Of a stretch of 64,000 bases of DNA, positions 26,896 to 52,742 are shown piece by piece; positions within the stretch are counted from its first letter, which is position 1, and each line of letters starts with the position of its first letter. The notes below the pieces were generated by a model. It made no database searches. It worked only from the letters and a program-made list of their open reading frames with translations, and had not been told where the DNA came from. Where the stretch lies: contig OZ037771.1 of the NCBI GenBank assembly GCA_964035545.1, positions 5,365,190 through 5,429,189 of the forward strand. The letters run 5' to 3'. This stretch comes from Bugula neritina (Eukaryota > Animalia > Bryozoa). The position numbers and the translations under genes are program-made.

Positions 26896-26899
26896 TACA

Positions 26900-28574: not shown

Positions 28575-29140
28575 GTTACAGAGAGTGTGACACTCACACT
28601 CACCGTGACTGACACCTACTCACTGAAACTTGGCCTTGCATAATGATAAGGCTGAAGAGTCACTTATTATTGTATTTACATTTCAGTTTGTTATTACTTA
28701 TACTTATAGTTATTTAGTTTTAACGATAATGTTTATGATTTATAAATTGTAACTGTGTTGTGGTGGGTTTTTATAATTTAGAGCTATTGCAAACTCACCC
28801 AATAATATACATATGTCGGGGCTGCCGGGTTAGCTCGGGTCGATATGTTGATACGGGGTTGCTTAGTTTGTAATAAGATAACTCCAGTTCCTGTCAGTCT
28901 TTAGAGGGTAGAGTTAGAACTCCAGGTTATGGTGTTTGTCAGGTGATGCTCCGAAGTCTAGGATCCTGGGCTAGCACTCACTACCATACCCTAACACATT
29001 TTATTGTGTCTGTACACATTCCATGTTCACAATTCTCAATTACCCGTCAATCAATTCTTCAATTCTCGCAATCTCTCATATACACTCGGTTTTATACCTG
29101 CAACACTCATGCAGGCCACTCCGAGTGGTCTATTGGTAAA
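28575..29140 (-). mobile_element. LTR/leader-like repeat (TATA, GGTGAGT donor, AT-rich tail)
   Basis: 28800-29140 is a diverged inverted relative of 24738-25090; 28575-28800 closely matches 41510-41725. Confidence 0.55.
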
Positions 29141-29765
29141 AATTTATCAACTGGTACTGTTGAACAGCAAAAGACCAACTTTTGCTGTCAAAATTTTTTA
29201 TTTTATCCTAAAATTAAAGCATTTGCACCGCATTTTAAAGCATAATTTGCAAGTTTATATCATAGCATCAATTCAAGTATGCACCACATTTAAAAAGCAT
29301 TGTAACGAAAACTAAATGATATATAACTGTGCAGATATCTGCAACTGTGTTTTATGGTTTGGTTCCATTTGTTATGTCGCAAGTCCTAACTGAATCTATA
29401 AATGGCAAAGTAAACCTGATTTGCACTAAAGTCTACATGATGACTTTGCTAAGTAGTGGCTTTGTTACCTGATCTAACCTGTCAAAGTCTAGAACCAACT
29501 TGATGTTCAGCCTACAAGTAACATAATTTGCGAAATATTAACTTGCTACGTTATAAATCAAAATATTTCATTATAATATGACTAAAAAGTGGAAGTTATA
29601 ATTCTGAACTAGGTGTCAGATTGTCGATAAGTTGGTTGAAAAGCATACAAATTGGTTATGATGTTAGCTGGATATATGTTATATTTTATACAAAGAATAT
29701 GTTATATTTATGATAGCATGTTATATTACCAAGTAGATACAATATTAAAAGAAATTGGTGGTTAG

Positions 29766-29796
<31 letters not shown>

Positions 29797-29857
29797 AAAG
29801 AAGATAGATAGATATATTAAAAACACAAAGGTTATTAAAGGTTTCTAGCTCAATGAT

Positions 29858-31585
29858 TTACAAATATATAAGAAAACAAATAGACTGGTTATGTTTATAT
29901 CTGCAAGTCAAATATTGGCCACAATCGCTTGTAGCGTTCATTACCAGCATAACATAATTTTTGGTGCGATTGCCATCAGCAGATCGATGGGCTCTCAGCC
30001 AAGTCTTAACATAGGGAGTAGGGTTGAAGACAGATATTGGAGGACCGAGTAGGGATATAAATACCATATCTGAAACATGTATAAAAAGTTTGTTTCGTAA
30101 ATCTGTGCAAAAATTATTCATTGCACTAATTCCACGTTCGCAATCACTACTACTCACTGGCATCGAATTAACTATAGCTTTGATGTGCACAATTTGCTTA
30201 GGTATACAAGCCAGGTTATCAATGTAGTCCCTAAACGACGTTAATATGTCGTTTGGGAATTTTTTGCAGAGTGTCTTATCTCCTTTCTTCATCATACCAT
30301 GGCGGTTCAACATCACTTGGCCATTTTATTGGCTCAAGGCAGTTGAGTAGTGCAAGCATTTGTTGCAGATCATCTTTTTCACACTCACGGCGCAGTCCTG
30401 ACGAAATTGTACCTTCAAGGCGACTCTGCATATTGTCTATCAGAGCTTGTAAACATGCATCTTTGCTCATTACTGGCCCATGTAACTTCAAATCAATGCC
30501 TTTGAATTTGTTTTCGCTCTTTGCCCTAGCATATTCTTGATGCGATGTTCCAGAGCTATTTGGTCCCTTTTGACTATTCAATGCCCTTAATAGAGTTTTC
30601 AACCGAGCATATGCTGTTGCCAAATTTATATTTTCAGACTGCAAAGCTTCTGAAAAGAGTCCTATTTCTCTAAGACTATCGTGAAGTAAAGCTAAACTAG
30701 AAACGAACTGTGAATTTTGAAGCATGTTGAAAAGGCCCTTATAGAGGGAGTTGTTTGAGCTCGACTCCTGGGCATGCTGTATCGGGGCAGGATAGCAATG
30801 CCATATGGCATCAACTGTTTGGGAAACTGGAGGCAGCCCACCTTTTTTCCGCATTTGAATATTCAGTTGAGCTACACATGAATCTGCAGAAAAAAAATCT
30901 AGCTTTACAAGGCCAAGCAAAAATGAAAAAGCTTCATCATACACATTGTCTGGATCAAAATAAGATGATCTGATGTAGACTGCCAAAACCTATCTATTTG
31001 AAACAGATGTCGATTCACAAATGATTAATGACACTTTGTTGGAGTTGATTATCTTATTTATAAATTCGTTTTTCATCTCAGAAGTTATGTGAGATATTAT
31101 TTCGTAAGCTGGAGCACAAGAGTAAAGAGATATGTCACAATCACTGCCTTTCAACTTATTTAGCTCTATTAAATGAGACATATCAAAATAAGGCCTATTT
31201 AGTTTTGCAATATGGTAGGCACATCTAAAACATTTTCAGTTGCTTCTTCATGCTGTCGACTTGTAGCGGCAAGCATTGTTGGCAAAACGTGTTACTCACT
31301 TTTTTGCTTGCATATATAGCATCTCCATGTGCTTCACTGTGATTGTGGTAGACAATTTTTTTCAAGTGATGTCAACTGCTTTGTCATGGTGTCACCATAC
31401 CAGAAAACACCACTGCTTGTCCACTCCAACCTTAATCGAGATGTTTTCGTAGCGGGTGGGGTAAATCTCTTTGCAGGAGAACAGACCTGACAAAGTAATG
31501 CTCCACCTTGTTTGAGCTTGAGCCAGGGGTATTGAGCTCGTTTCTCCGCCCACTTTTCAGCAGACCAGCATGGTGGTAAATCCAT
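29858..31585 (-). mobile_element. Degenerate hAT transposase (ZNF862/KIAA1586-like)
   Basis: YPWL..LLCQVC zinc finger, VSLIICESTSVS (decayed DEST), PVSSSDCERGISAMN..RNKL hAT dimerisation motif; several frameshifts. Confidence 0.85.
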
Positions 31586-31799
31586 TCCGCCTTTTTCCTA
31601 CAAGTATATCTTCAAAATATACACACCTGCACAAAGCAATCCTAACTTAAAAAATAATATAGTTGTTAAATTTAAACCTACCCCAACTATAGTAGGGTGT
31701 GAAGTGGCACATAGAGTGCGCATGATTTGCGGCAAAACTCGGTCTCACGACCAATGTTCATAACCTACCAGAGAGCTCTTAAAAGCTTTTCCAGAGTTT

Positions 31800-32250
31800 G
31801 GTTTATTCGCTCCATCAAAGAGTTCCTTTGAGGACGGTAGAGTAAAGTTTAAATTTTCTCACATTCCCAGAAATTGCAACAGGCCTGAAAAAGTTTGGAT
31901 TGGAACTGAGAACCTTGATCTGAGTGAATAATTTTAGGGATTTCAAAAGGTGCACTTTAAGGGGTGTGTGTTCTGGTTCATTGAATATCTTTATTGAAGC
32001 TGTGGTGTCCACAATGTGTTTTATTATTACATATCCTGCCATCCCTTCATTTACTTGAAAGTCTTGTTTTTCTATGCTCTCTTGTTCTGGTAGAGTACCA
32101 TCTCACCTACTCGCAGATCAATCGGACTGGCGTTTATCTCACATTATCTCTTCTGCTTGTCTTTCCCTTTCCTTATTAGCAGTCTGGCTTAGTTCCAGAC
32201 CTCTTGCATCCTGCAATGTAGCTTGGTTACGTATGGCACGTCCATCTGGT
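31800..32250 (-). mobile_element. Gypsy family A integrase C-terminal fragment
   Basis: YVIIKHIVDTTASIKIFNEPEHTPLKVHL homologous to the 37626-39389 ORF tail. Confidence 0.8.
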
Positions 32251-32279
32251 TTCTAGCTAAGTTAACTTCCGCTGCGGTT

Positions 32280-33060
32280 TCTGATTTTAATAAGTTGTTT
32301 TATTTTCGGCAGAGCTTGATGTCGGAGGTGGAGATGCGGATTTTTCTGCTGCTTCAGCAATTTGTAGTTGTGTGATGCTACATATTGTTAGTCAATGCTT
32401 GCTAGCCGCGCAATGTGTTTGTTGAGTTATTGTTTTTTTGTTAGTTATTGATGCTTATATGCTGCTGTCTGGCTGTGATTATGAGTATCAGTTGTTTCCC
32501 AGTAATGAATTTCAGTATTGTTTTATAGTTTACCAATGTGTATAATTGCCTTGTAATCAGAGTTGACTGTTGATGTTTATCAATATTTTTAATTATTTGT
32601 ATACTTCTCATAATTAGTTGGAACAGAATGATTGCTTTTTGTTCTACTTGCAGCATTGTGGTTGATAATACCACTATGATTATCCTTGATAGTTATTTAT
32701 TACTGTCAGACTGTGTATAATAAAAGAAAGGAATGAATGGCAAGTAGGTGTGCTGACAAAGCATAAGCCACAGTCTTGGCAGTTGGATGCTTTGATAAAA
32801 GCGTAGCTGATATACCATGTCAATGTCAAACTTCTTTGTTTCCAAGTATCGAAATATGTGACCAAAATAGCCATCTGTCAGCAGTTCCGACTTGGTTTGT
32901 TGGGCTGTGTATTTGCTCTTAAGCATTTGTTCAAAGGTGTCCAGCGCATTTCTCTCAACATTTGGGGTAATAGGGTCAACTGGATTTTCACATCCTTCAT
33001 CATCGGTCAAATGAGGTCCTTCTTGGAAGTACTGACGTTATTATGTTCTTCCTAAACTTT
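32280..33060 (-). mobile_element. Gypsy-like family B pol remnant
   Basis: ENPVDPITPNVERNALDTFEQMLKSKY..DGYFGHIFRYLE matches 50540-50730; 32330-32800 matches 47290-47770. Confidence 0.7.
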
Positions 33061-33119
33061 CTCAACAATTTCCTTTACCTTCGATCTTTTGGGCTTGTCA
33101 ACTTTGATGCCTTTGTTCT

Positions 33120-33440
33120 TAATTATTCTTAATATTTTACAAACCGTACTCCTCTTTTTTTCGACCAACTGTTAAAAAGTTCTTACTAACTGCCGGCTTC
33201 ATACCACCAGCTGAAACCTCATCATTTCTGACGCAATTATGCTCTGGTGGTATACTGTCTTTATGACTGACACATGAAAAGCAAGAACTAGATGAAACTT
33301 CAGTATCTGCTATTTTAACTGGTTTTCCTACTGTGTGGGTAGTAATAGTTATAGCTACCCCATTCTTCCTATTAAAGCCCCTACGCTGCCAGGTACCATC
33401 ACAAGATTCTGCTATATTACTACTATTAGTTTTACTAGCA
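33120..33440 (-). mobile_element. Mutator-like (MULE/Phantom-type) transposase fragment
   Basis: Hand translation DGTWQRRGFNRKNGVAITIT..GKPVKIAD..CFSC..HNCVRN..SAGGMK fits the DGxWxxRG/CxxC/HxC signature; remnant may extend to ~34290. Confidence 0.75.
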
Positions 33441-34899
33441 GATTTTTTGGCCTGATTTAGTTTGTCTATAGTATATCTGTTGCTACATTAAAGGCTCATC
33501 CAACTAGTCAATATGAATATAAATATTCTCTAATAAAACTGTCAAAATAAGTAAATGTCAACGCCTTGTAGTATAAACTGTCAATAAATAAAGAGTTCAA
33601 CCTGTCTACTCTTGGTTTTTACCAGTTGGGAGAAAATTTAGATGAAGGATTGATGATAAATTGTCAGATTATTTTAGCAGGTTGGAATATCACACGTAGT
33701 TTCTTTGTTTGTGTTGGCCAACAAGATTTGCATCACATCACTCGATAAGTACAACCAATAAATGGGGCAATTTAAAGGTCGAAGTAATAAAATCCGAACA
33801 AATAGCGTAATCCAATTAACTTTGTTTTGTTACCAAGTATATAAACCAATCATTTTATAGCATTTGCAGGCTGGTGCACGTCACACCTGCAAAAGTCAAA
33901 GTAGCTTCTCTTTTTATATACCCTACATAAATGAATAGTATTATACGCCTTTTTATAAATGTCGTCTGAGAATGAAGCTGTTTTTGAACTAGTAGTTGTT
34001 TAAAAATGAAGGTTGTGGAATGACTTGTCACCCTTGATCGATTTTTTACTTTTATGGTTAACCAAACAGGGAATTTCTTCCTCACACTTCGTCTTGAATC
34101 TGTTGAGAACCATAACCTTTCCATGCTTTCTGTTTTCTTTCTATGTTGTGGTGATATATTTCACTTCCATTAACAGCAGTAATTTCCTTGAAGGATTTAA
34201 CCTCCTGTACAGATCCGACTGTCGGATCTGGCAGGGAAGCGGATTTACTTACCAGTTTATCATTTTCTTGGTTAGAAAGTTTTTTAAAAACATATGTAAT
34301 ATATGTATATATAGTATATAATTTCCAAATTTATTAGGAAACATAATATATGTGAAAAAACATATTTTTACTTCATCCAAAGTTAAAATGTTAAACTAAA
34401 TGTCACAGTAGCAAAATGCTTCATCACGCAGACTCTCTTGAAAAAGTTTACCCTGTATTGTATCTTACCTGCTTCTACACCAAATTTAGTTTTCAACAGG
34501 ACAGCCCCTACTCTTTTAGTGAGTACATCAAGATTGGCAAGAATGTTTATCTGTCATTCTCAGTTTTTACCAACAAGTCAACTTAAACCTGTTTTTGAAA
34601 ACCATTCACTGTTGTTTTTCTTCATTTGAAACGTATTCTCACTGGTTTGTGAAAAGTAAAGCCATTGAAGAAGTCTTCGACTTTAACAGTTCTTTGTAAG
34701 AGGTTTAACTCTTCCCATAGCCAAACTATTATGAGGAGTACAAGTGTGTATGTTGCATGTACTGTCTTATGTTCTACGTAATAATGTATTTATCTTACTC
34801 TGTCGAATTGTTGCCGGCTCTTCCATACCACTCCTTTGAGTTTTTTTGTTGCTGCCTTGTTTCTTAAAAGCTGGGTAATATTCATTCGTTTCAATTTAC

Positions 34900-35110
34900 T
34901 CCCACACATGCATTAACACGGTAGCTGTAGTATCAGCGGTCGTGTTTCTGGCCGCCATGATGACATCAGTGGTTCTGACTGTAGTGGTAGCTGTCGTAGC
35001 AGTGAGTCTATATAAGTCAAATATGACTTACTTGAATTTAGATCCAGAAAGGCTCATCTTTGACACAGCCGTTAAATACAAAAAACCGTAAAATTACCAT
35101 TTTTTTTCAA
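34900..35110 (-). repeat. Dispersed decayed ORF unit, copy 1 (hydrophobic segment + Thr-rich tract)
   Basis: YLTAVSKMSLS..LTATTATTTVRTT..ARNTTADTTAT; homologues at 41775-42130 and 42940-43235. Confidence 0.6.
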
Positions 35111-35479
35111 TCTTTTCAATAGTTGAGAGATGCTTCCTTAGTCTCATATAGTATATGATATTTTTTCGCATCAGCAGAGGTTACATCGTTTGCTGGCCTT
35201 GTTATAGGAGGTGGCCTTTCTCAGGGTTCTTCGTGATATAATAAAAAAATTTTCTGTTTGAGCATAAAGCTGTCTTGGAACTAGTAGAATTATTTGAACG
35301 GTGAAGTGTCACTACCTGTCATCCTTGATTGATTTTTTGCCCTTGTAGTAATCTGGATAGCGAAGCATTTCCTTGCACTCCTTTTTGCATCTGTCAGGAA
35401 CCTCGCCATGCTCTGTCTCATTTTTGTACTGTGTTAACATATTTTAGCAAAAATACACCTCCACTGAAGGTTTCCTTGA

Positions 35480-37428
35480 AGGGTTCAACTTTCAGTATTG
35501 ATCCAACTTTAAACTCCATCTTCCCGTTGGATACACTTTCTAAAGACATCAATGATGACACCCCTAATCTGATATCTCTTTCCCAACAATAAAAGACAGA
35601 TCATTGTGTTTCTTGATCGTGTCCAGTTCTTCATTGGCTGTGGGATTAGGTGAGACCTTAACAGATGACCTGGAGTTGTGGGTAAGTCCAAGTCAATTGA
35701 TACTTCTGACATAGGTCCTCTAACTAGAGGTTCCTTGTGTCTTTTTAACGAGTTCAGGTGTACTCTAAAGGGTGTTTGATCAGGTTCATTAAACAAATGT
35801 ATTGAGGCAGTTGTGTCGGTTGTGTTTTATTGCATACATGTCCTGCCATCTCTATCAATTTTGAGGTTTTATTCTTGTATGCCCTTTTATTATAGTATAA
35901 CACTATATCACCCATTCTTAGATCTATGGGGCATGATTTTCTGTCGTAATATTTCTTTTGCCTTTCCTTTCCTCTGCTTATCAGCAGTCTGGCTGTGTCC
36001 CAAACCTCTTGCATTCTGTTATGTAATTTTGTGACGTACGGGACGTCATCTGCCACAATAGGTGGGCGAGGTTTGGTCAGTTCGTACGGCTTTCGCATTT
36101 CTCTGCAGAATAAGAGCATACTTGGTGTGGTGGTGGTGTGTACCGATGAGTTGTGTACCAGTTGACAGAATGGGATGCATCTGTCCCAATCGCGATTAGT
36201 GCCTGGGTCGACGAAGTTTGTTTGATTGTTTTATTGTGTGGCAAATGGAAATTATGCACACAGTTGAGAAAAATAAACAAACTGATAAGGTCCATGGCGC
36301 AATAGCACTGCAGCTAGTCGAGGTTCCGAGCCGTGAATAGTTGACAGTCAGCGTATTATTTTCTGTTATATAAGATTTTTATAGTTTTTTGTAAAGCTTT
36401 AGCAACTCAAAGAGTATCATTTTTTATCTGTTAATTTGAAATTTGCCATTAAGTGGTCTCTTAGGGCAAGTTTAAAACCAGCCTCCCTCTCCACAGCACA
36501 ACATATTGGCGATTGTTTTATTGTATATCTCCACTTGGCCATTGGATGCTGACGAGTCAGGTACACTGAATTATGAGTCAGTCTTGAAAAGTTTATTCAC
36601 TTCAACCATGACTGAGCTCATGAATGACTTGGTCCTGTCCGAGAGTAGTCCTGACGCGGCCCCGAATTTGCAAATGATCTGCTCAACATAGACGCGAGCG
36701 ACTGTTGCTGCTGCTTGGTCAGCAGTGCAGATCATTTCACACTATTTTGTAAAATGGTCAGTAAATACTAGGACGTATTTCATTCCGTCAGTACTCTGCA
36801 CGAATGAACCGAGGAAGTCCATGGATAGCGTGTGGAATGCCCGGTCGCTATCCTTGTTGCTAGTGGGACACGGGTCTGGGTTTTTGGATTCTTCCTTTGC
36901 TGACATGAATGGCATTCCGAGACATATTTTTCAACCGCCTGGTGCATTTTCGGGAACCAGTAGTGCTGTTTTAACCAAAGCATGGTCTTTGTCACTCCTG
37001 GATGCATAGCCGTTATGCTGTCATGCATAGCGTACATCAGGAGGTGACGCTGACTTGAGGAAATTGCTAGCAGTGCTTTGTCTTAATAGTTGCGGTACAC
37101 GAGCCCGTCATTTACCTTGACTTGCTTGCTGTCCGCAACTATCTGGTTCACCTCTGCCTTAGAGGCGTTTTTCGGGAACTTCCCCTCCTCCAGGTACGGA
37201 AGTACTAGTACCAAGAAATAGTCTCGTTTTTGTTCGTTTCTTGTCTGCTCATTAATGGTGGCAAGATTCTACAGAGAGACTTTCTGCTCATGATAGAGCG
37301 TCTGCCACCACATTTTGTTTACCCGCCTGGTGTATGATTTCGAAGTCATAGTCAGCTAATTGTATTGCCCATCTGGCAAGGCGGGGAAACAAGTCCGGCT
37401 TCTTTATGATATATGTACAGGCAGCGTT
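35480..37428 (-). mobile_element. Gypsy family A RNase H-integrase, second decayed copy
   Basis: HPGVTKT..HYWFPKM..CHSCQQRK; collinear with 37970-39440; interrupted by an insertion at 36218-36497. Confidence 0.9.
36218..36497. other. 280-bp insertion of unknown origin in integrase
   Basis: Copy 1 reads gacgaagt-ggg-acaacatattgg; copy 2 has 280 bp in place of ggg; no TSD. Confidence 0.75.
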
Positions 37429-37625
37429 TTCAATAATCAAGCAGCAGATAGCAGCTGTAGAATGCAATTAGAGTTAGAGTTGAGTCTAACTAGGTTGATA
37501 GAAATACTTGATAACCAAAATATAGCAGTGAATATAATATATATAATTAAAAGAATGAACCTAACCAAAATAGTCAGTCACGTTAGGTGCTCGATCTTTT
37601 ATTGTGTAACTGTATCATGGTAAGT

Positions 37626-40600
37626 CTAATTTTTATAAGTGAATTGCGCATCCCTTTTTCGCTTTGATCTGCACCTTAGACTGTATCGTTGGTTGTTATG
37701 AGTTGGTGGTAGCTTCATTTTTTCTGCTTCCTCAGTTTCGTTGTTCTGAGGCTCTTGGACACTAGTTTGTTCTTGGTTGTCATTGCTGTATGCAACGTTT
37801 GTATCTGTCCCATTGTAGCGTGTATGCCCATCATTATGAACTTCATTGTCTGTTGTAAGTTGGCGATCAGTCCCTTGGCAGTCTTCTTCACTAGATGGTA
37901 CGTCGGAGTGGAAGTTGTCGGGTTCTGGAGCCGAAGTTTCAATCTCCTCAGAACCTGAGTCTTGAGTTGTGGGTGAGTCCAACTCAATCGATATTTCTGA
38001 TGTGGGTCCTCTAACTAGAGGTCCCCTGTATCTTTTCAGTAGGTTCAAATGCACTCTAAATGGTGCCTGATCTGGCTCGTTGAATAGTTGTATGGCAGCA
38101 GTTGTATCGGTTATATGTTTTATTATGTACATGCCCTGCCATCGCTTTATTAATTTAGCAGTCTTGTTTTTGTATGCCCTTTTATTGTAGTAGAACACTA
38201 TATCTCCCACTCTGAGATCAGTGGGGCGTGCTTTCTTGTCGTAGTATCTCTTCTGCCTTTCTTTCCCCTTTCCTATCAGCAGTCTGGCTGTGTCCCAAAC
38301 CTCTTGCATTCTGTTGTGCAACTTCGTAACGTACGGGACGTCGTCTTCCACAACAGTTGGGCGAGGTTTGGTCAGCTCGTATGGCATTCGCATTTCTCTG
38401 CAGAATAGGAGCATACTTGGTGACGTTGTGGTGGTGTGTACTGATGAATTGTGCGCCAGTTGACAGAACGGGATGTATCTGTCCCAATCGCGATGGGTGC
38501 CTGGGCCGACGAAGTGGGACAACATATTGGCGATAGTTTTGTTGTATATCTCCACTTGTCTGTTGGATGCTGGCGAGTACGGTACACTAAATTTTGAGTC
38601 AGTTTCAAGGAGTTTATTCACTTCAACCATGACTGAATTCATGAATGACTTGGCCCTGTTCGAGAGTAGTATTGATGTGGCCCCAAATTTGCAAAAGATC
38701 TGCTCAACATAGACGTGAGCGACTGTTGCTGCTGATTGGTCAGCAGTGCAAATCATTTCACACCAATTCATAAAATGGTCAATAAATACTAGAAAGTATT
38801 TCATTCCGTCAGCACTCTGCTTGAACGGACCGAGGAAGTCCATGGATAGCGTGTGGAATGGCTCGGTCGCTATCCTTGTTGCTAGTGGGACACGAGTTTG
38901 AACTTTCGGGTTCTTCCTCTGCTGACATGAATGGCATTCCGAGACATATTTTTCGACCACCTTCGGGAACCAGTAGTGCTGTTTCAACCGGAGCTTGGTC
39001 TTAGTCACTCTTGAATGCATAGCCGTTATGCTGTCATGCATAGCGTACATCAGGAGGTGACGCTGACTTGAGGGGATAGCTATAAGTGCTTTGTCTTGAT
39101 AGTTACGGTACACGAGCCCGTCAATTATCTTGAATTGCCTGCTGTCCGCAACTATCTGATTTGCCTTCGCCTTAAAGGTGTTTTCCGGGAACTTCCCCTT
39201 CTCCAGGTGCAGAAGTAATGGTCCTAAGAAATAGTCTCTTTTTTGCTGGTTTCTTGTCTGTTTATCAATAGGGCAGGATTCTAGAGAGAATCTCCGCTCG
39301 TGATAGGGCGTCCGCCACCACGTTCTGGTTGCCCGCCTGGTGTATGATCTCAAAGTCATAGTCGGCCAGTTGTATTGCCCATCTGGCAAGGCGGGGAGAC
39401 AAGTCCGGTTTCTTTATAGTGTATGTACAGGCAGCGTTGTCAGTAATTAATCTGAATTTGACGTTTATCAGATACTGCCTGTGGTGTTTGACAGCACACA
39501 CTATGGCGAAAAGCTCCTGCTGGCAGATATCCCATTTCCTTTTGGCGGCTGTTAGCGTACGGGAGTAGAACGATAGAGGGTGTTCCTTATTGTCTCGGAG
39601 CTAAGACAGGACAGCCCCAATCGCAGTATCCGACGCATCAGTCGTCAGGATGAATGGGCTTTTAATGTCAGGGAAAACCAGAATTCTTGCTGTGGTGATT
39701 CTGGTTCTCAATTATTCGGAGGCGCTCTCACACCCTGCGGACCAAATAAACTCGGCGTCTTTGGATGTGAGTTTGATTGGAAGAGTTGCGGTTCGCACAA
39801 AGTTTTTTTATGAACGACCTGTAATACCCAAAAAATCTAAGAACTTTCTTGACTTCGGTTTTATTCCACAGTCGGGAATTTTTTAATCTTCTCGGTATTG
39901 TGTGGTGCAACTGCTATACCTTTGCTCGACAATATGTGACCCAGGTGTAGGATCTCCTTCTGACATAGCTGGCTTTTACTCAGTCTGCACTTGAGTCCAG
40001 TGTAGCGGAGTCTGGAAAACACCATACTGAGTAGTTGCAAATGACTCTCATACGTGGTTGATGCCATCAGCCAGTCATCGAGGTAGACGCAGCTGCTGCC
40101 CTCACTTATTAGATCGGCCATAATGGCTAATGCGAGGCGAGTGAATGCCGCAGGTGAGCCCGACATTCCTTGTGGCATTACATTAAGTTCATAACGGCCG
40201 AATGGTATTATAAATCCTGATTTCTCTCGAGACAACTCGTGCAGTGCTACTTGAAAGAAAGCGGAGCACAAATCGATGCTGCTGAAATACTTCTTGTTCT
40301 GCATGATCTCAACAGTGTTCTCTATGCTCGATATCGCTATAGACTTCTTAATCGTTAGTGAGATCAGTTTCCGGTAATCTACACAGAATCTTCACCTCCC
40401 ATCTTTTTTTTGACCAGCACGACTGGCGAGGTCCAATTGCCCGCGTTGGGTGTAATCAGCCCGGCTTCTTGCATTTCATCCAGTTGTGCTTTTACTTCCG
40501 ACCTTATGCCTACTGGAATGGTATATGGTTGGCTGCGTATTGGTTGTGTCCCGAGGGTTGTTTCCACCACGTGTTGTGCTATATTAGTATGTCCAAGGTC

Positions 40601-41450: not shown

Positions 41451-41509
41451 GCAGATGTATTTTATGCACACGTAGTAATACAGTTTCCTTAAAACAAAAA
41501 CAATTGAAG

Positions 41510-41725
41510 CAGTCGTCACAGTGAGTGTGACACTGACAGTGACTGACACCTACCCACTGAAATTTAGCCTTGCATAATGATATGCCTGAAGAGTCACTTA
41601 TTTTTGCATTCACATTTCAGCTTATTATTACTTATAGTTATTTAGTTTTAACGATAAAGTTTATTATATATAAATTGAAACTGTGTTGGTGGGTTTTTTA
41701 ATTTAGAGTTATTGCAAACTCACCG
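41510..41725 (-). repeat. Copy of the 28575-28800 leader-like repeat upstream of Gypsy A
   Basis: Shared gtgactgacacctac..ccttgcataatgata..gagtcactta..attgcaaactcacc. Confidence 0.85.
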
Positions 41726-41728
41726 AAA

Positions 41729-41774
<46 letters not shown>

Positions 41775-41777
<3 letters not shown>

Positions 41778-43235: not shown

Positions 43236-43400
43236 ATTAGGCCCGTATAAATTTTTTACTATATGCGAGTGCTCAGGTGTTTCCCTTACCCAACTATTTG
43301 TGGGTGTTTTCGGGATAAGTATAAGATTTCTGTCTAAACATTACTCAAATAAAAGAATCAAAAAAGGTGAAAAACAGTAGACTTAACTATAATATTTAAT

Positions 43401-46080
43401 CTAACCATGCTGGCAGTGCAGGGTGAAGAGTCCAGGAGTCAAGCTGCTATGAAACACTTTGCTGCAACTCAAAAAAACTTTTAGAAGGCTGTTCATTGTC
43501 TGCCACATAGTTCCCCCGCCCACAAAGTTGTGGCAACATTGGCAAGCAACAAAGATGTTGCTCCGCTGCCGAACCTGTGGCATTGAGTTTGTGATTTTGC
43601 AGTTTGTTAAAAATTTCCAGAATCCTCAAGCAAATTGGAAGAATGACTTGGCAGTCTCCTCCACACATATATCTTGCAAAGTTGAAAAAAATGGCGAAAT
43701 GTGCTGCAAAGCATGGATTGTGCGTGAGTCTGGCAACCTGCTGCCAAGACTCACGACACCATCAATGGCCTGTTGGTTAACCAGAGAGGTTATTGGTAAG
43801 GTTTTCAAAATCTACAAAACAACATTTGTAGAAGTAATTTTTTAAAATCTTAAACAATCTTTACGATAACGGATAAAAAATACGAATTTAAAGAGTACTT
43901 CTTTAATGAATTTTCAGTCATAAAAATTTGCGCATATAAAAAAGTCAGTTACCTATTCATTTTTATAGTGTAAAAATAGTTACATTATAATGTTGTAAAG
44001 TAACAACCTACATTTGTCAGCAGATCAATCCAATAATCGGGAACATGATTAGCCTGAAATGCATGCGTTACAATTTTTTCTAAACATGTGCTTTGTGCTG
44101 TAAAGGATATAGACTGGACATCAATATCATCAACTTTGGCCATAAACTTCAGAACACTTTCATGATTTTGAGCAGAAATACCAATAGTGCGGTCAGTAGA
44201 ACCAAATTCCGAAAGCACAGAAACCTTATTGCAAAAAAGATAGCACAACATGTTGAAATAAGAGATTTACAAAGCTTGCATTTCATTTATCGTCCAAGCG
44301 GTTCAATATGTTTGAAAAGGTAGCATAATAATGTAAAGTTAGTGATACCTGTTTCCTTTCAGCAAAACAAGTTCAGCGGCTTTTGCACCTCGTTTGCTGC
44401 GGGCATACCGTTTGGGATACCCCAGGCTTATTTCATCACAAAAGACTACATCGGGATGGGGCTACATTGGGACAACTAAACCACTCATCTTTTCTTTCAA
44501 TAGGCTGTAAGTAGGACAGCCCAGCTAGTCGAAATTGAGAATAAGATGGGCGCAACTGCATGGATTAATTTTCCATCAAACGCCATCCCCACAGTTCATA
44601 AAAGCTGTACATGCTATTCCTACAACAATAGAAACAACTTACAATTGAAATTGATGGTATATAAACATACAACTAAGTAATTATGAGAGGTTTTGATATT
44701 CTGAGGCAGCTGAAAGCTCAGATTCTAAAGCAGCATTATGTAAAAATATATATTTATGAATCTATCTAACATCACCAATGGACTGCACCTTTTCGAATAT
44801 CATCAACAAACCCAGCTTGAAGAAACAGCATCATATATTCTGCAAGCAATCTATGAGACACCAGATATGTTCCCATATTTAGAACACCCTCTTTATAACC
44901 ATCTGCGTTTAAACCTGTGCCACACTTGCATCTACCATGATACACTAAAAGTAAATAAAATTAAAAACCATGCCGTATAAATAACATACCAACATGAAAC
45001 ATTGTCACCCTTGGCAGTTAAGCTATACCTTCTTTAATATTTTTGTGGGTTTATGCGGCTGATAAAGTACATTGTGGGTAGTTGTGAGAATTACTGCTCG
45101 AACACATACTCTTTGTGAGATTGATGAGAATTTATAATTTCAATAGCTTGCAACACGACAGGACCGAAGTCTGACACCTTACAAGAGCTAGTGAAGATAT
45201 ATACAAAAATACAACTAATTATTGATAACTATATTAAAGTAGCGCTAAAGGCCGACTGTCTGCATGGGGCATTGTTTCTACGGTATATATTTGCGCAGCA
45301 CCTTCGGTTGGTCTGTAGGTTATAGTATACTATGGTCATGACACTGTGTCGATAGCCAATGAGTATCAGTCAAACATATAGTTTAGTGCCACATTTCGAA
45401 CAGTACGTGACAAAATTGATGATGTGTCAAATAGCACTCCTGACTATTGGAAGAGCTAGCACAGTAAATGTCTGTACAAGAATGTCAAAAATTCATCACA
45501 ATATGCCTGCAACACACATTCAAGCTATTACAATGCCAAAAGGATGTAAACAAGCCTGTGCATTTTTCTCACATTGCTTATTAGATATTGAAAAAGAGTC
45601 GAAGAAAGGGACCACAGCAGGCACTAGCTCCACTCCACAATCACCAGAAACTGGGCAAGGAGAAGGCATGATGTATTCTTGATTTATTGACACAGGGTTG
45701 CTAAAAAATATTAACATATTTTGCGAAACAGTTGATATATTGTAATAGCTAAAAAATAAAATTGAAAACAAGTGTGTGTACAAACAAGCTGCAACATCTC
45801 AATGCACTTGGAAATAAGGGAAATCGGGTTAATTAAATCAACCATTTTTAAATGATATAAGGAAGTGAGTGATATGCTTAAGAGATACCAAAAAGGGTTT
45901 AAACTAGGAGATGATACGCTCTTTTGCTGATACAAAGATTCAGTTGTTGAAGCAGTATTAAGTAGCTCTGAGATAACAGCCAAACTATCAGTATCATTTG
46001 AAGAGTTTTCATGAGAGGCCGTAAAGCCTAAAATAACAAAATTACATGTATAGTTGTAAATAAGTGTTACGTAATAAATC
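43401..46080 (-). mobile_element. Decayed multi-exon KDZ/Zisupton (HMGXB3-like CxC) transposase
   Basis: VYHGRCKCG..ADGYKEGVLNMG (44830-44945), WFSCP..HPDVVFCDEISLG (44350-44620), LPQLCGRGNYVAD and CSK..LTPGLFTLHCQHG (43401-43560); GT-AG introns between the blocks; stops and frameshifts. Confidence 0.7.
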
Positions 46081-48139
46081 ATAAATGTAATAAATTTGAT
46101 ACAATAAATAAGACATGAACTATTAAAAACATGAATTTAGTATGTAAAATTATTGAGTAAATACAAAATATTATAACAAAAAACATAACTAGCCTCTGCT
46201 CCTTTAAACAATATCTTTATTACAGATACACATTCTGTCAGCAAATATATTAAATTGAAGTATAACTTTATGAGTGCACTCTATGATGGTTAAATGCCAA
46301 CTGGTTACTTGGGTTAAAAATAAAAAATAACCTGTTTTGATTTGACTTATGGATGCTGTCATTGCCAGGTATCGGGTTTAATTATCTTAATTTTGACCAC
46401 CAGAAATCTGTTTATGCATGAAGACAAAGAAGTTTTATATGTATTGTAGATGATGCTCACGAATTGGTAAAGCAGATTCTACTAGTTGGTATAATGTTAT
46501 GTGTATGTGAATATGAATACATTTATGCAGTTCAGCATTATTGATAAGTAAACTGATGACTATTTTCTTGCTACCTTTACAGTTTGTTTCCCTTGTGAAA
46601 GGGAACTAAGGTTCCTCTCCTGGAAAGGGTTGCTTCTTTCGAAAACTGTTGCTAGTTTCCGTGTAGGTGCTATATAACTGTTAGCACAGCTTGGTGTGTG
46701 TTTGACTATTTACTGGTATGTTTACCATGCTGAACCGGTGAGTTTGGCTTGGATGGTGAGGGCCAACTACTCGTCATAACGATGAGGGACCATAAGGACC
46801 TCCCATCTTTCAATAAACTCCCATGACTCAGTCGAGTCATCTGAGTATGATAGAAGACTGTCTAAATTTAGCACCACACTAGTTATTATCTGTGTGTGTT
46901 GGCTTGTTTGAAAGAGGTTTTGAGCCGGTACGTTGTTGAGGAAAAGTCGTGGTTGGTAAGTTGGTACCTGCAGTATAGGTTTCATTTGTGACTGGGCAGC
47001 CAAGCCATAATGTATGACCACATGGCTGGGTGTAGGACCGATGGATGTGGAACTATTTATACAGTTCCGTCCTAATTCTTGTGTTAGTGAATTCCAGAAT
47101 TGTACTGCCTTTTCACTCGAAATAGGAATCTTCAGTGTAGTCTTAGGCTTTGTCTCTCTACAGTGGGATGGTGGGGTTGGGTCAGACAAAGTAGTGCTTT
47201 TTGTTTGTGAATTGCAGTCGAATCGGATGAGGTGATTGAAATTGTAGTTCTTGTTGCATATTTGGGATTTTGTGTCGGTAGAGCTTTATGTCGAAAGTGG
47301 AGATGTGGATCTTTCTGCTGCTTTAGCAATTTGTAGTTGTGTGATGCTACATACTGCTGGTCGGTACTTGCTACTCGTACAATGTGTTTGTTCAACTATT
47401 AATAGTTTTTTTTGTTGGTTAGTTATTAATGCTGATATGCTGCTGTCTGGCTGTGATTATGAGTATCAATTTTTTTCCAGTAATGAAGCTCAGTTTTTTT
47501 TTATAGTTTACCATTGTATATAATTGCTTTGTAATCAGCGTTGAATGTTTATGATTAGGGGTATTTTTAATTATTTTTCCAAGTCTCATAATTAGAACAG
47601 AATTGTTGCTTTGTGTTGTACTTGCAGCCTGGGATCATTTAATACCACTATGATTATCATTGATCGTTATTTATTACTGTGAAACTGTGTATAATAAAAG
47701 AAAGGAATGAATAGCAAATGGGTGTGCGAAAAAAGTATATGCCAAAGTCTTGGCAGTTGGGTGCTTCAAAGCAGCAGTACCAGTGTATCTATTGACTGCT
47801 TCTACACAAACTAACACGTTTCTGTTGCCTTGTATTGTTTTTCTCAAAGCTTGTAAGTAATCTATGTACCATGTTGAACATGTTTCTTGGATTGGAAGAT
47901 GCCTAAGTTCAAGAACAAGTTTTTCTGGTGGTCTCTTCACCATAGAGTATGTTTGGCAACCTTTGATGAAAATGTCAACATCCGGAGATGTCGACTTTTA
48001 GAAAAAAACCATTGTTTAATAGCCGAGACTGGGTGACTCCTCTATCACCACTTGAAATATTGCTGTAAAAGGCTCAGACAACGTTTTGTTACATTTCCAT
48101 AAGAACTATTAGTATCAGTTTGAAAGTTTGGGTCGTAAC

Positions 48140-50464
48140 TGTTTTGTGTTTTGATTTCAACTATTGTGAAAAGGAGACACCGTGCTCAAGTTAGTTGCTT
48201 AACGGAAAAGGCCGAAGCCGTGATTTATTACCACAATATATATACAAGATAATACTAAAATTATTACAATAAGTGAGACAACTTATTATTATGCACAAAA
48301 ATAGGAAATTAATAAAATAACATTACAAATAAATGGTTACATAAATACCCAACATCTCCCACAGAATAGAAAAAGGCTAGTTAGGTACGAATGTTTTAGG
48401 AGGGCACATAGTCTTCCATCCAACTAGGGGGCTTCCGTTCTCTGGTTGAACGCCGTAGGTTGTCGCTATGATTGGCGCTCTCGCTGGTTTCAACCTGGGT
48501 GCTACTAGCATTTTGTTTAAGATCCTTCGGTGCCTCAGAACTCACTGGCTCCGTGACGAGAGGTCTGATATCTCGCCGGTTTCTCCGAAAGAGGTTGTTG
48601 TTGTGTTGTACGGCATAGGCTCTGCTACTCAATAGTTTGTTAATTTGCGTCTCCTGCCATTTTTTCCGGTGCTGACTCCAGTCTCGAACCAAACTGGTTG
48701 CCCTTCTTTCAGCACTGCCAAATCTCTTGCACCGTCATTACATCTCTGCTGTAGTTTTTCATTGTGGCCCTGCTTTTCCCACCAACCTTGGTTGTCCTCT
48801 GTTTCTAGCTTGACTGGTAGTACTGACCTGGTGGGCCTTCCGATGAGTTGCTGAATTGGGCTGGCCGTCAGGCCTTCCTTGGTGGTATTGAGATGTTCTA
48901 GCAACGCAAGTTCAGGCTCTTCACATCTGCGGAGTATGCGTTTGACTATTTTCACAGCAGACTCTGCCTTCCCATTAAACTGAGGATGATACGGAGAGCT
49001 GGTGGTGTGTGTGAAATTCCATGATTGGCTAAAAGTAAAAAACTGGTGTGATGTAAACTGTGGTCCGTTGTCAGTGTGAACCTGTCTGGGTATTCCCAGG
49101 CGTCCAAAACAGCGCTTTTTAGAGTTGATTACAGTCTCTGATGTTTGGTTGTCCAGTCGGTCGTATTCAAGGTAGTCAGTCGTATAGTCAACAATAGTAA
49201 TATAATGAGTGTGATTGTATTCAAACAAGTCGATTCCTACTTTTGTCCAGGGTTGTTGGGGAACTGTGTGGAGTAAAACTGTTTCCTTCTGTTGTCGCGG
49301 AGCATCCAGTTGACATTGTCGACAGCTAGCAATATTGTTTTTGATGTCATTGGTGATGCCAAGCCAAAACACTGTGTGGCAAGCACGTCTTAGTGTGGAG
49401 TTAATTCCATTATGGCCAGTGTGAAGTAGTTAGAGAAACTTTCTCTGGAGTGCCTTTGGAATAATGGCTCTTAGTCCTTTGTAAACAATGCCGTTGTCAA
49501 TAGATAGTTCGTCCTGAAAGTGTTTGTACTTGTCATGAGTTGTGCAGTGGGCAACATTCCAGTCATGTTTAATAAGGTTTGTCAGTGTCATAAGTTCATT
49601 ATCCTGTGCAGTAGCAGTCCTGATGTTGTTGATTAAGTCGTCACAAACAAGAGTATCATTATTTTGAGAGTCAACATGAAAAATGTGTTCTGGTAGTTGT
49701 TGATAGTTGCGAGAGTCAAAGTATGGGTTTCTTGAGAGTAAGTCAGCCGTGATCTGTTCAGCACCCTTTTGCCAAGTTACCTTAATGTTAGGGTATCTTT
49801 GTAAGTGAAGAAGCATAGCCTGCAACCTCCGAGATGCCTTATGAATGGATTTCCTGAAAATAGATACAAGGGGTTTGTGGTCCGTTTGGATAGTGACAGC
49901 ATGGTGACCAAAGATATACTGGTCAAAGCGTTCAGTGCCAAACACTATGGCAAGGCACTCAAGCTCTAGTGGTACATAGTTCTGTTCCGACTTTGTTAAA
50001 CTGCGAGATGCATATGCTACAGGCTTGCCTCCTTTCATGAGTGTTGCACTCACACCAGCAATTGAAGCGTCAGTTTGTATAGTTACTGGCTTGTTACAGT
50101 CAAAGTATTGTAGAGTTTCCGAGTCAGTAAAATCTTTCACTCCTCAGGTAGATTCGGTTCATATGCTAATGGTTTTGGCGCTAATAATTGCTCCATGTTG
50201 TTTCAGTGTAATAATAATAGACACGGGGCACCATTTTTTGTGTTGTTTTGTGTTATTATTTCAGCTATCGTGAAAAGAAGAGAAGGTGCTCAAGTTAGTT
50301 GCTTAACGGAAGAGGCCGAAGCCGTGATTTATTACTAGAATATTTATATAAGATAATACTAAAATTATTACAATAAGTGAGACAATTGATTATTATTATT
50401 ATGCACAAAAATAGTAAATTAATAAAATAACATTACAAATAAATGTTTACATAAATACCAAACA
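48140..50464 (-). mobile_element. Internally deleted Gypsy (Mag/K02A2.6-like) LTR retrotransposon with LTR pair, 5-bp TSD and PBS
   Basis: LTRs TGTT..AACA at 48140-48354 and 50244-50464; TSD GTAAC at 48135-48139 and 50465-50469; RH (QTDAS, YASRSLT, TDHKPL), IN (GIDLF, TDNGPQF, NGKAE); gag start MEQLLAPKPLAYEPNLPEE fused to the RT-RH linker. Confidence 0.95.
50221..50233 (-). promoter_or_regulatory. Primer-binding site TGGTGCCCCGTGT (elongator tRNA-Met-like)
   Basis: + strand acacggggcacca matches the eukaryotic tRNA-Met(e) 3' end as I recall it; 10 nt inside the 5' LTR. Confidence 0.75.
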
Positions 50465-50819
50465 GTAACCAACCACAGAAGTTCTTCTGTTGCCATAATT
50501 TTTTCACGGATCTAATTTGGAAAGCTTCCGCAGCTGATGTCATGTCAATGTCAAATTTTGGTTTCCAAGAATCGAAGTATGACACCAAAATAACTATCTG
50601 TCAGCAGATACATCCTGGTTTGTTGGCCTGTGTATCTGCTCTTGAGCATTGGTTCAAAGGTGTTAAGGACAGTTCTCTCAGCATTTGGGGTAATAGGGTC
50701 AAGTGGATTTTCACATTTTTCATTTGATTTGTTAAGGTGTTGAACTTGAGATAAACCTGATACATCCCTATGCTTTCCAAGATCATTTTTCCGCTGCCTT
50801 TTGTGAAACAGCATTTTAG

Positions 50820-51915
50820 CACCTTAGTTACTTAGTTGTGGCTCTAGGTTACTCCATTTTCACCCAATTACCCATTTCCCCCATTAAAATGAGAGTTGAA
50901 ATCATCATTTTTTACATCAATTTTGCTCAATAGAGTTGACAACTCTTCTATCACACCCATTGCACAACTTTTTGTTTTCTCCACCTCAAATTTTACCTTC
51001 ATATCTGGGGCAATGCATACACCTCTTAAGCATCTTATAGTGTCCATCCTTAGATAAATTTGAATGTCACTTACTAACTTTTTCGCAACTAAACATCTAT
51101 TTTTGACTTCTGTTCCGTTTACTTGAGCTTTCATCACAGCCTCCCTCTAGCAGCTTGCACACTCCATCGAGCACTTTAACGACTTTAGTTGTATACTTAT
51201 GCAGTTAACAGTCGTGTTAATTACATATATCTTTTCCAGTGTCTATTAAAGCTCTAATACTATGAATAAACATATTGGCAGTTATATGGTTGCACAAACT
51301 TTAGTGCTGTGCAGAGATTGTGTCCGGTTCTTATGCCCCTTTTTTGCTGTTTCCCAACTTTTTATGGCATTGACGTGCTAAATGCCCTTCTTCACCACAA
51401 GTACAGCACAGTTTACTGTCTGCTCAGCAAATTAGAATAGCATCTGCTTTTTAAGGAGACAATCGTTGGCAGAGTTCCCTTGCTCACAAGTATAGCAGAC
51501 CTTTTGTTATCATGTTGCACTCGCTGAAGAGTATTGAGACTTTAGTTCTGGCGCTGGCAACCGGTGCACACAAATCCAAATTTTGTACTGTAGCGGTTGC
51601 TTTTGGCGTCAGTTAAACCATGAAGAAATTCTGCCCTGAGTGCACACATTAATAATGGCTCAGTACTCTCTTGACCCATTGATAGTGACTAACCTATTTA
51701 AGTCTGACAAGTACACATCTTAGGACTCACCTGGCTCTAGCACTCGTTTCAATTGATTATTTGCCATATAGCCGCTAGTACCAAATACCTCTATCGATGC
51801 AGCTTCTAACTCCTTATACTCATTTCTCTTTGTGTTTATATGCTGTACATGCAGGTCCATTTGAAAATTGTGGCGAAAAGATCCCGAATTCAAAACTTTC
51901 CACTTTTTGGCATCT
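50820..51915 (-). mobile_element. Gypsy gag-protease remnant (another family)
   Basis: RVLEPGES.DVYL, EFLHGL, two decayed CCHC knuckles (CYTCEQG, CCTCGEEGHLARQC), protease-like region to DFNSHFNGG. Confidence 0.75.
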
Positions 51916-52148
51916 TACCCGCCAGTTTTCGTTTTTTTATTTACTCTGCTATCTCTCCAGGTGTCTTTGAATCTATATATTCAACTATGATATCTCATAA
52001 CCTTGTGATAGTCATGGTACTGCCGAAATAACTTCTAATATTTAGATAAACAACTTTATTAACCGTTTTCAGAAAACAAATATAATACAATAAGGAGAAA
52101 GCTTACACAGTAGATAAGAATATCACAACACATTCCCATGCACAGAAC

Positions 52149-52620
52149 TTACCTCTGGCATCGATGAAGGCAACTGCACCAATGACATACCCGTGCAAAT
52201 AAAGATGGAAAAAAGTGAGACACTAAAATTTGTGATCTCTGTGAAATAGTGTTTCCCACTTTGCTTCTGTTTTCTAGCACACCTTTTTGCTGATGATCAA
52301 ATTGAAAACAGATCAGCACAGTCCTCATTATTCCAAGCATGTGTGTCCTCAGCCGTCGATGCGAAGTAAAGCTTCCATCACAGGAAAAGCACTCCTTATT
52401 ATTGGGCCCGCCTCAGCTATCAGAACCCGGGTCCCAGTACTGGTCCAGTGAGGACGAGTACTTTTTATACATGGCAACCAAAGATCCCCAGTTTCCTCTC
52501 GTTGGTAGTCGGTGCCTTGAGAGAAGACAGGATGGCTCTTTTCTGTCCTTCGTCTAGATCGATGTCAATCATGGTGGCTGGGATCTCTGCAGCATCATCA
52601 GCTCCTTCACTAGCCTGAAT
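52149..52620 (-). pseudogene. Decayed ORF with a C2H2 zinc-finger-like motif, probably TE-borne
   Basis: ECFSCDGSFTSHRRLRTH in a GC-richer stretch with many stops. Confidence 0.4.
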
Positions 52621-52742
52621 TTCCAATTTGAAGAGTTCTCCAACCGAGTGAGAGCTCTGGTAACAGTGTCAGTGACCCTATTGTCGTGTTTGTGTTGCAA
52701 TCAGCCACTTGCACAACTTGTTATTGTTGTTTACTACTTGTT

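What the first reader, a model, noticed from the sequence alone, without database searches (positions are those of the whole stretch)
28575..52620. ~24-kb transposon mosaic with one-strand orientation: flamenco-like uni-strand piRNA cluster candidate
Seen: every TE relic I could orient from 29.8 to 52.6 kb is on the minus strand (hAT, three Gypsy-A pieces, two Gypsy-B pieces, MULE, KDZ, the nested LTR element, a gag-PR remnant, Thr-rich units, C2H2 remnant). They span DNA-transposon and retroelement classes, are mostly fragments, and no host gene is evident. Only the edge elements (LINE 26.9-28.5 kb, Gypsy 52.7-53.9 kb) are plus. Established: uni-strand piRNA clusters such as Drosophila flamenco accumulate TE fragments antisense to cluster transcription, and some piRNA clusters use bidirectional promoters. 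Inference: a plus-strand precursor starting at ~23.8-25 kb, divergent from RBM41 (first exon 23733), would be antisense to all of them. Caveat: some pieces may be local duplications rather than independent insertions.
Basis: partly seen in the sequence, partly recalled or inferred. Interest (0 to 1): 0.8.

Follow-up and report, generated by a model that had tools for sequence, protein, structure and literature searches.

The report
Same-direction transposon pile, piRNA role unproven
A 24-kb gap between two genes of a (probably bryozoan) genome is filled with dead transposon pieces that all point the same way, but most belong to one giant retrotransposon and its local duplicates, so only about five insertions are independent and nothing shows that the locus makes piRNAs.

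Summary
The transposon pile is real. Every piece that I could orient by protein evidence between 29.1 and 50.7 kb lies on the minus strand, and none lies on the plus strand. That covers about 14.2 of 24 kb. The count of more than twelve relics does not hold up. One old copy of it probably runs from 37.4 to about 50.7 kb. Four kinds of repeat exist only inside this locus and are all direct, which points to local duplication. What remains is about five clearly independent minus-strand insertions: hAT, MULE, a second Gypsy fragment, the giant Gypsy, and an LTR element nested in it. Up to seven can be counted. Plus-strand elements bound them on both sides.

The chance of such a run in this intergenic region is 0.04 to 0.16, before correcting for a 216-Mb genome with at least 2,192 reverse-transcriptase loci. 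About 31% of the interval is not recognisable transposon. The KDZ, C2H2 and "Thr-rich" calls are weak or cannot be oriented. No RNA data could be reached, and nothing marks a plus-strand promoter.

I read it as an ordinary transposon nest. A piRNA source locus remains possible at about 13%. The scan has flagged at least four similar co-oriented piles elsewhere in this genome.

The parts
26898..28479 (+). Left boundary: young 5'-truncated LINE fragment, outside the co-oriented run
   Evidence: RVT_1 E 3e-39 on the plus strand. It is 97-98% identical to many genomic copies that share the 3' end at 28479 and are truncated at varying 5' points; the first look found 1,211 candidates.
28575..29122 (.). 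Locus-specific unit R1 (28575-28750) joined to a MITE/SINE-like repeat of about 370 bp; no intrinsic direction
   Evidence: 28754-29122 has dozens of 71-78% copies on both strands. 28575-28814 matches only 41515-41742 of this window.
29124..31688 (-). hAT transposon relic with a frameshifted transposase
   Evidence: Paralogs on contig 1 are 86-92% and about 75% identical. The paralog's 679-aa ORF has Dimer_Tnp_hAT and DUF4371 and reads against the window's plus strand. A hAT C-terminal motif is visible in 29861-30325, minus strand.
31698..32242 (-). 545-bp integrase fragment of a further Ty3/Gypsy family ('Gypsy-D')
   Evidence: 31698-31954 is 75% identical to the inside of a 1,459-aa PR-RT-RH-IN ORF (L036). 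31947-32242 matches giant-Gypsy pol residues 1044-1142. The two stretches are contiguous on the minus strand.
32306..33000 (-).
   Evidence: 83-84% identical to 47275-47766 plus 50529-50723, in direct orientation. No other genomic copy was found except a 78-bp match to the intact element's 5'UTR.
33128..33829 (-). Internally deleted MULE relic
   Evidence: Mutator E 2.6e-10 at 33140-33487, minus strand. At least 10 genomic copies are 84% and 74-75% identical. The paralog's transposase matches Mutator at E 1.4e-39 on the corresponding strand.
33830..35511 (.). Unclassified sequence with one 'T unit' (34927-35069)
   Evidence: No other copy in the genome apart from the T units in this window. 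No Pfam family on either strand.
35512..37432 (-). Giant Gypsy integrase fragment (copy I), abutting copy II
   Evidence: Integrase_H2C2 E 1.1e-20. tblastn matches to pol of the intact element. 83-86% identical to 37961-39450. The junction at 37432/37434 joins element position about 10351 to about 8300 with no filler.
37434..41525 (-). Giant Gypsy copy II: pol (PR-RT-RH-IN) and the C-terminal end of ORF1
   Evidence: RVT_1, Integrase_H2C2 and rve on the minus strand. 87% identical over 3.8 kb to two other genomic copies. tblastn matches pol and ORF1 residues 1112-1207.
41515..46577 (.). Filler inside copy II: R1 duplicate, (AT)n, two T units, three non-coding repeats and a weak CxC4 trace
   Evidence: tblastx scores all frames alike, so the repeats cannot be oriented. 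CxC4 E 0.029 at 44775-44960, minus strand. AT skew turns positive at 43-46 kb.
46578..47766 (-). gag N-terminal part and upstream region of copy II
   Evidence: tblastn matches ORF1 residues 68-278 at 56% identity. ORF1 carries Retrotrans_gag. The order is colinear with the intact element.
48140..50464 (-). Nested LTR element with an internal deletion, belonging to a high-copy family
   Evidence: RT_RNaseH and rve on the minus strand. LTRs 48140-48354 and 50244-50464 are 89.6% identical, with TG..CA ends and a GTAAC target duplication. At least 40 genomic copies are about 93% identical. It lacks about 2.1 kb relative to a 4.5-kb copy.
50529..50723 (-). Continuation of copy II's upstream region beyond the nested element
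   Evidence: 84% identical to 32802-33000, which is uninterrupted in the duplicate.
50724..52680 (.). Unclassified, single-copy sequence with a weak C2H2 trace
   Evidence: No other genomic copy. zf-C2H2_4 E 0.016 at 52152-52412, minus strand.
52681..53931 (+). Right boundary: LTR-like repeat plus gag-like frames
   Evidence: 52681-52950 has about 30 copies at 75-89%, and the five fetched match over the repeat alone, without the adjoining gag-like region. The adjoining 52953-53931 is 84-88% identical to two loci, one of which directly follows such a repeat. The plus-strand frames have no Pfam support.
55560..55817 (+). KDZ transposase relic outside the claimed interval
   Evidence: tblastn of the genome's 451-aa KDZ ORFs, E about 1e-13, plus strand.
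57620..57982 (-). Exon of the right-hand host gene (PAN domain)
   Evidence: PAN_1 E 6.6e-9 on the minus strand.

Best explanation
This is an ordinary intergenic transposon nest.

Its core is one old copy of a 12-kb-class Ty3/Gypsy retrotransposon lying on the minus strand from 37.4 to about 50.7 kb. Later material entered that copy: a 2.3-kb LTR element with a clean 5-bp target duplication, and several non-coding repeats.

Local direct duplications then multiplied pieces of it. A pol fragment abuts the parent copy. A second copy of the region upstream of gag sits 15 kb away. The R1 unit occurs twice and the T unit three times.

Three other elements inserted nearby and happen to be on the same strand: a hAT, a MULE and a fragment of another Gypsy.

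So the uniform orientation is mostly shared ancestry, plus a run of about five independent insertions that chance readily gives in a genome this full of transposons.

Shown here: the identities, orientations, nesting and locus-restricted duplicates. Inferred: that 37.4-50.7 kb is a single insertion, that the 37432/37434 junction is a tandem duplication, and that no special function is needed.
For: - **One family, not several.** The intact relative is 12,318 bp long with 640-bp LTRs, a 1,220-aa gag-bearing ORF1 and a 1,288-aa PR-RT-RH-IN ORF2. Its proteins hit the window at 31947-32242, 35674-37440, 37632-41236, 41241-41510 and 46578-47204, all on the minus strand and colinear. The 'Gypsy-B' sequence touches that element's 5'UTR.
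- **Local duplication.** Every repeat inside the interval is direct. R1, the T unit and 32306-33000 have copies only in this locus. Copy I abuts copy II with no spacer.
- **Modest statistics.** A same-strand run of at least 5 among 8 oriented elements has probability 0.16, and at least 7 among 10 has 0.04.
- **Crowded genome.** It has at least 2,192 RVT_1 and at least 1,304 rve candidate loci. A hand tally of neighbouring intact elements within 35 kb gave 13 on the same strand and 8 on opposite strands.
- **Mixed region overall.** Plus-strand elements bound the run on both sides. The whole intergenic region therefore holds 5-7 minus-strand and 3 plus-strand elements.
Against: - Not one plus-strand coding relic lies inside 24 kb. 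Even the unclassified stretches share the negative AT skew.
- DNA transposons (hAT, MULE) and retroelements agree in direction, which shared ancestry cannot explain.
- The scan's notes list at least four other co-oriented piles of 17-26 kb between genes of this genome. If those hold up, the pattern may exceed chance.
Confidence: 0.7

Rival explanations
1. The locus is a uni-strand piRNA source. A plus-strand precursor would start between RBM41 and the pile, read through it antisense to all the transposons, and be cut into piRNAs that silence the matching active families.
For: - All orientable pieces are antisense to a plus-strand transcript.
- They come from several classes, including families that are still abundant. 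The nested LTR family has at least 40 copies at 93% and the MULE family at least 10 copies. The giant Gypsy family has a copy with identical LTRs.
- The size is close to mollusc piRNA clusters of 2.7-17 kb (PMC11067994).
- Similar piles were noted elsewhere in this genome.
Against: - No RNA evidence of any kind.
- Only about 5-7 independent events support the bias.
- No promoter feature at 23.8-25 kb.
- A 98%-identical LINE in sense orientation, presumably carrying its own 3'-end signals, lies between the supposed start and the pile.
- It is 10-40 times smaller than flam-like clusters.
- In molluscs piRNA clusters make up less than 0.1% of the genome, so the prior for any one transposon island is low.
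Confidence: 0.13
2. The orientation bias comes from selection or insertion preference tied to ordinary transcription of the neighbouring minus-strand genes. Examples are read-through from the PAN-domain gene or a distant upstream start of RBM41. piRNAs would play no part.
For: Earlier follow-ups on similar piles kept 'ordinary transcription' open.
Against: From general knowledge, the usual bias inside transcription units is against sense-oriented retroelements. That is the opposite of what is seen here. No exon or transcript spanning the pile was found. The plus-strand elements at both edges lie in the same intergenic region.
Confidence: 0.07

Closest known systems
Drosophila flamenco and flam-like uni-strand piRNA clusters (PMC10643416)
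   Same: A gene-free region dominated by Ty3/Gypsy fragments that lie on one strand, next to a protein-coding gene.
   Different: - Flam-like clusters span 227-1,085 kb and were defined with 100-kb windows. This locus is 24 kb with about 5-7 independent insertions.
- Flam is defined by strand-specific piRNAs and a mapped promoter. Neither is available here.
- Here hAT and MULE share the bias, whereas in flam-like clusters the bias is driven by Gypsy elements.
Mollusc piRNA clusters predicted from small-RNA mapping (PMC11067994)
   Same: Spiralian animals, clusters of 2.7-17 kb, and in some species enrichment for LTR/Gypsy and DNA transposons.
   Different: Those clusters are defined by mapped piRNAs, while this locus rests on layout alone. 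They make up less than 0.1% of the genome. Strand uniformity of the transposons is not reported as a defining property in the passages I read.
Nested intergenic retrotransposon blocks ('TE nests'), as described in plant and animal genomes (general knowledge)
   Same: Old LTR elements serve as landing pads for later insertions with intact target duplications. The blocks also show fragmentation, internal deletions and local duplications.
   Different: Nests normally show mixed orientations. Here all orientable members agree, though with few independent events.

Membership tests
flamenco-like uni-strand piRNA cluster | Abundant 23-32-nt, 5'-U-biased small RNAs mapping almost only to one strand | not testable with these tools
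   No small-RNA data can be reached. No relevant paper on Bugula piRNAs was found.
flamenco-like uni-strand piRNA cluster | One upstream Pol II promoter driving a long continuous precursor | not testable with these tools
   No transcript of the locus is in the collections. The proposed start zone shows no CpG or GC peak and holds a repeat.
flamenco-like uni-strand piRNA cluster | Strong transposon enrichment with no host genes | tested here: met
   About 59% of 28575-52620 is oriented transposon and about 10% is unorientable repeat. No host-gene domain was found. About 31% is unclassified.
flamenco-like uni-strand piRNA cluster | Transposon fragments overwhelmingly on one strand, beyond chance | tested here: inconclusive
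   Oriented bases are about 14.2 kb on minus and 0 on plus. After collapsing one family and the locus-specific duplicates, only 5-7 independent events remain. Run probability is 0.04-0.16 without genome-wide correction.
flamenco-like uni-strand piRNA cluster | Size of hundreds of kilobases (227-1,085 kb in Drosophila) | tested here: not met
   The co-oriented run spans 29.1-50.7 kb, bounded by plus-strand elements at 26.9-28.5 and 52.7-53.9 kb (size range).
Ty3/Gypsy LTR retrotransposon (the 'giant' family behind most of the pile) | Two LTRs flanking gag and a pol ordered PR-RT-RNase H-IN | tested here: met
   The full-length relative has 640-bp LTRs, Retrotrans_gag in ORF1, and Asp protease, RVT_1, RT_RNaseH, Integrase_H2C2 and rve in that order in ORF2. 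The window copy itself has no detectable LTRs.
hAT DNA transposon | Transposase with the C-terminal hAT dimerisation domain | tested here: met
   Dimer_Tnp_hAT (22.2 bits against a cut-off of 21.4) and DUF4371 (21.4 bits, below its 32.1 cut-off) in the 679-aa ORF of the 86-92% identical paralog. The window copy is frameshifted and gave no Pfam hit of its own.
KDZ (Kyakuja-Dileera-Zisupton) transposon inside the interval | KDZ transposase domain or a significant associated CxC domain | tested here: not met
   Only CxC4 at E 0.029 and 14.7 bits, against a cut-off of 26.9. The genome's KDZ proteins match the window only at 55560-55817 on the plus strand.

The most novel reading that the evidence does not exclude
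This pile and the four or more similar 17-26-kb co-oriented piles noted between genes of the same genome could be the piRNA source loci of a bryozoan. They would be small, uni-strand and gene-adjacent, and each would be read from a neighbouring promoter. That would be the first description of piRNA clusters in the phylum, and it would show that flamenco-type architecture exists in Spiralia at a tenth of the Drosophila scale.
Probability: 0.12. Interest if true: 0.6.

Novelty: already known. Interest (0 to 1): 0.27.

Why it matters
If the plain reading holds, this is a routine transposon nest. Its main use is as a warning: fragments of one 12-kb element and its local duplicates can pass for a dozen independent co-oriented insertions.

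If the minority reading is right, one small-RNA library from Bugula gonad or whole colony would give the first piRNA cluster map for Bryozoa. It would also test whether uni-strand clusters are older than arthropods. Because similar piles recur in this genome, a single genome-wide orientation test plus one sequencing run would settle all of them together.

Tried and rejected
- **Transcript evidence.** An exact look-up of ten ATG-started window ORFs found none in the collection. The word search with the 595-aa integrase ORF gave a best hit of 57% identity, so no assembly of this locus is held. No usable paper on Bugula piRNAs exists in the library.
- **Genome background test.** I planned to fetch about 1.6 Mb of random blocks and annotate them with a protein library taken from this genome. 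Only a crude hand tally of neighbouring RT and integrase hits was possible (13 same strand, 8 opposite).
- **Plus-strand relics.** Twenty plus-strand frames gave no transposon family.
- **KDZ inside the interval.** Not supported.
- **Orienting the non-coding repeats** at 45036-45472, 45923-46011 and 46022-46581 by tblastx. All frames score alike, so they cannot be oriented.
- **Missing middle of ORF1.** A sensitive tblastn for ORF1 residues 279-1111 in 41.5-46.6 kb found nothing credible. The single-insertion reading of 37.4-50.7 kb therefore rests on colinearity alone.
- **Intron of a plus-strand host gene** as the cause of the antisense bias. Rejected, because both flanking genes are on the minus strand and no plus-strand exon was seen.
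- **CpG observed/expected as a promoter marker.** Values are low everywhere (0.1-0.8) with no island, so it is uninformative.
- **Pfam on the plus-strand gag-like frames** at 52954-54100. No support. Their plus orientation rests on the order of LTR and open frames and on two paralogous loci.


Full report
**Setting**

The window is contig 7, 5,365,190-5,429,189, of a 216-Mb assembly in 321 contigs. Earlier notes of this scan name the organism as the bryozoan Bugula neritina and place RBM41 on the minus strand just left of the finding. I did not verify the species. The right-hand neighbour is a minus-strand gene with a PAN domain from 57.6 kb (PAN_1 E 6.6e-9). The finding therefore lies in a 34-kb intergenic gap. 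Repeats fill that gap from 24.4 to 57.4 kb.

**What can be oriented**

Protein-family matches in the window itself put the following on the minus strand:
- Mutator at 33140-33487.
- Integrase_H2C2 at 36783-37082.
- Integrase_H2C2 and rve at 37629-39413.
- RVT_1 at 39864-40391.
- rve at 48632-49429.
- RT_RNaseH at 49433-50143.

The hAT call needed a paralog. Window 29190-31688 is 86-92% identical to a stretch of contig 1. The 679-aa open frame there carries Dimer_Tnp_hAT and DUF4371 and reads against the window's plus strand.

The MULE was confirmed the same way, with the paralog matching Mutator at E 1.4e-39.

A 257-bp repeat at 31698-31954 lies inside the integrase part of a 1,459-aa Gypsy pol ORF elsewhere in the genome. 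It is contiguous with 31947-32242, so the two form one 545-bp integrase fragment of a further Gypsy family, also on minus.

Twenty plus-strand frames of 60-130 aa gave no transposon family. Stop-free stretches of at least 100 aa total 3,675 aa on minus against 895 aa on plus. AT skew is negative across 30-43 and 47-52 kb.

**Why the count shrinks**

I used that relative only as a yardstick. It has 640-bp LTRs, a 1,220-aa ORF1 with a gag domain, and a 1,288-aa PR-RT-RH-IN ORF2.

Its proteins hit the window colinearly on the minus strand:
- pol at 37632-41236.
- The C-terminal end of ORF1 at 41241-41510.
- The gag N-terminal part at 46578-47204.

So 37.4 to about 50.7 kb is most simply one old element with inserted material. 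The caveat is that the middle of ORF1 could not be found in 41.5-46.6 kb.

The LTR element at 48140-50464 is a clean nested insertion. It has TG..CA ends, a GTAAC target duplication and LTRs 89.6% identical. Its family has at least 40 copies at about 93% identity.

**Local duplication**

All eight repeat pairs inside the interval are direct. Four kinds of repeat have copies only in this locus:
- R1, present twice.
- The 150-bp 'T unit', present three times.
- The upstream-of-gag piece, 32306-33000 against 47275-50723. The 32306-33000 copy lacks the nested element.
- The pol fragment 35512-37432. It abuts copy II at 37432/37434 with no filler, joining element position about 10351 to about 8300. 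That is the signature of a tandem duplication.

These rest. A family that had transposed independently would be expected to leave copies elsewhere in the genome.

**What is left**

Five insertions are clearly independent and on minus: hAT, Gypsy-D, MULE, the giant Gypsy and the nested LTR element. The count is seven if the two duplicated giant-Gypsy pieces are treated as separate.

The weaker calls do not add to this:
- The KDZ call rests on a sub-threshold CxC4 hit (E 0.029). The genome's own KDZ proteins match only 55560-55817 on the plus strand.
- The C2H2 trace is E 0.016.
- About 31% of the interval has essentially no other copy in the genome and no family match. This covers 33.83-35.5 kb, most of 42-45 kb and 50.72-52.68 kb.

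Plus-strand elements bound the run: a 98%-identical, 5'-truncated LINE at 26898-28479, an LTR plus gag-like piece at 52681-53931, and the KDZ relic.

**Statistics**

With random orientation, a run of at least 5 among 8 oriented elements has probability 0.16, and a run of at least 7 among 10 has 0.04. Neither figure is corrected for the genome. The genome holds at least 2,192 RVT_1 and at least 1,304 rve candidate loci, many of them intact. A hand tally of neighbouring intact elements within 35 kb gave 13 on the same strand and 8 on opposite strands.

**The piRNA reading**

The layout is compatible with it, and the size is near that of mollusc clusters (2.7-17 kb, PMC11067994). Against it:
- The locus is 10-40 times smaller than flam-like clusters (227-1,085 kb, PMC10643416).
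- No transcript or small-RNA evidence could be reached.
- The proposed start zone has no compositional mark and contains a repeat.
- A young sense-oriented LINE sits between the proposed start and the pile.

I put this reading at about 13%.

**Recurrence**

The scan has noted at least four other co-oriented piles of 17-26 kb between genes of this genome. These are unchecked notes, and first readers select for bias. Even so, the recurrence justifies one genome-wide test.

Noticed in passing
L025+L026 (contig 7, about 4.541-4.554 Mb) and contig 5, about 9.055-9.068 Mb: An unusually large Ty3/Gypsy family: 12.3 kb long, with 640-bp LTRs and a 1,220-aa ORF1 in which only residues 221-315 match a gag domain. 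The other roughly 900 residues of ORF1 have no family match.
   Followed up: partly
window 48140-50464; L035 2258-6734: An LTR family with at least 40 copies that are all about 93% identical to the window copy and score almost the same as each other. The one 4.5-kb copy I inspected has only broken frames of about 190-200 aa. It may be a non-autonomous element amplified in trans.
   Followed up: partly
window 26898-28479: A very active LINE family. The first look found 1,211 candidates. Many copies are 97-98% identical, share one 3' end and have staggered 5' truncations.
   Followed up: no
window 55560-55817 (+): A KDZ transposase relic matching the genome's intact 451-aa KDZ ORFs (E about 1e-13).
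   Followed up: partly
window 24346-24395, 25343-25381, 26711-26898: Short-period arrays upstream of RBM41, with a TATTAG hexamer repeated about 28 times and 12- and 18-bp variants.
   Followed up: no
window 57620-63621 (-): The right-hand host gene has a PAN/apple domain exon. Further minus-strand frames at 58.5 and 63.3-63.6 kb look pentraxin- or lectin-like by eye, but Pfam gave nothing for them.
   Followed up: no
window 43000-46000: The AT skew flips to positive (+0.03 to +0.12) inside the otherwise negative pile. The stretch is nearly single-copy and has no family match, so its origin is unexplained.
   Followed up: partly
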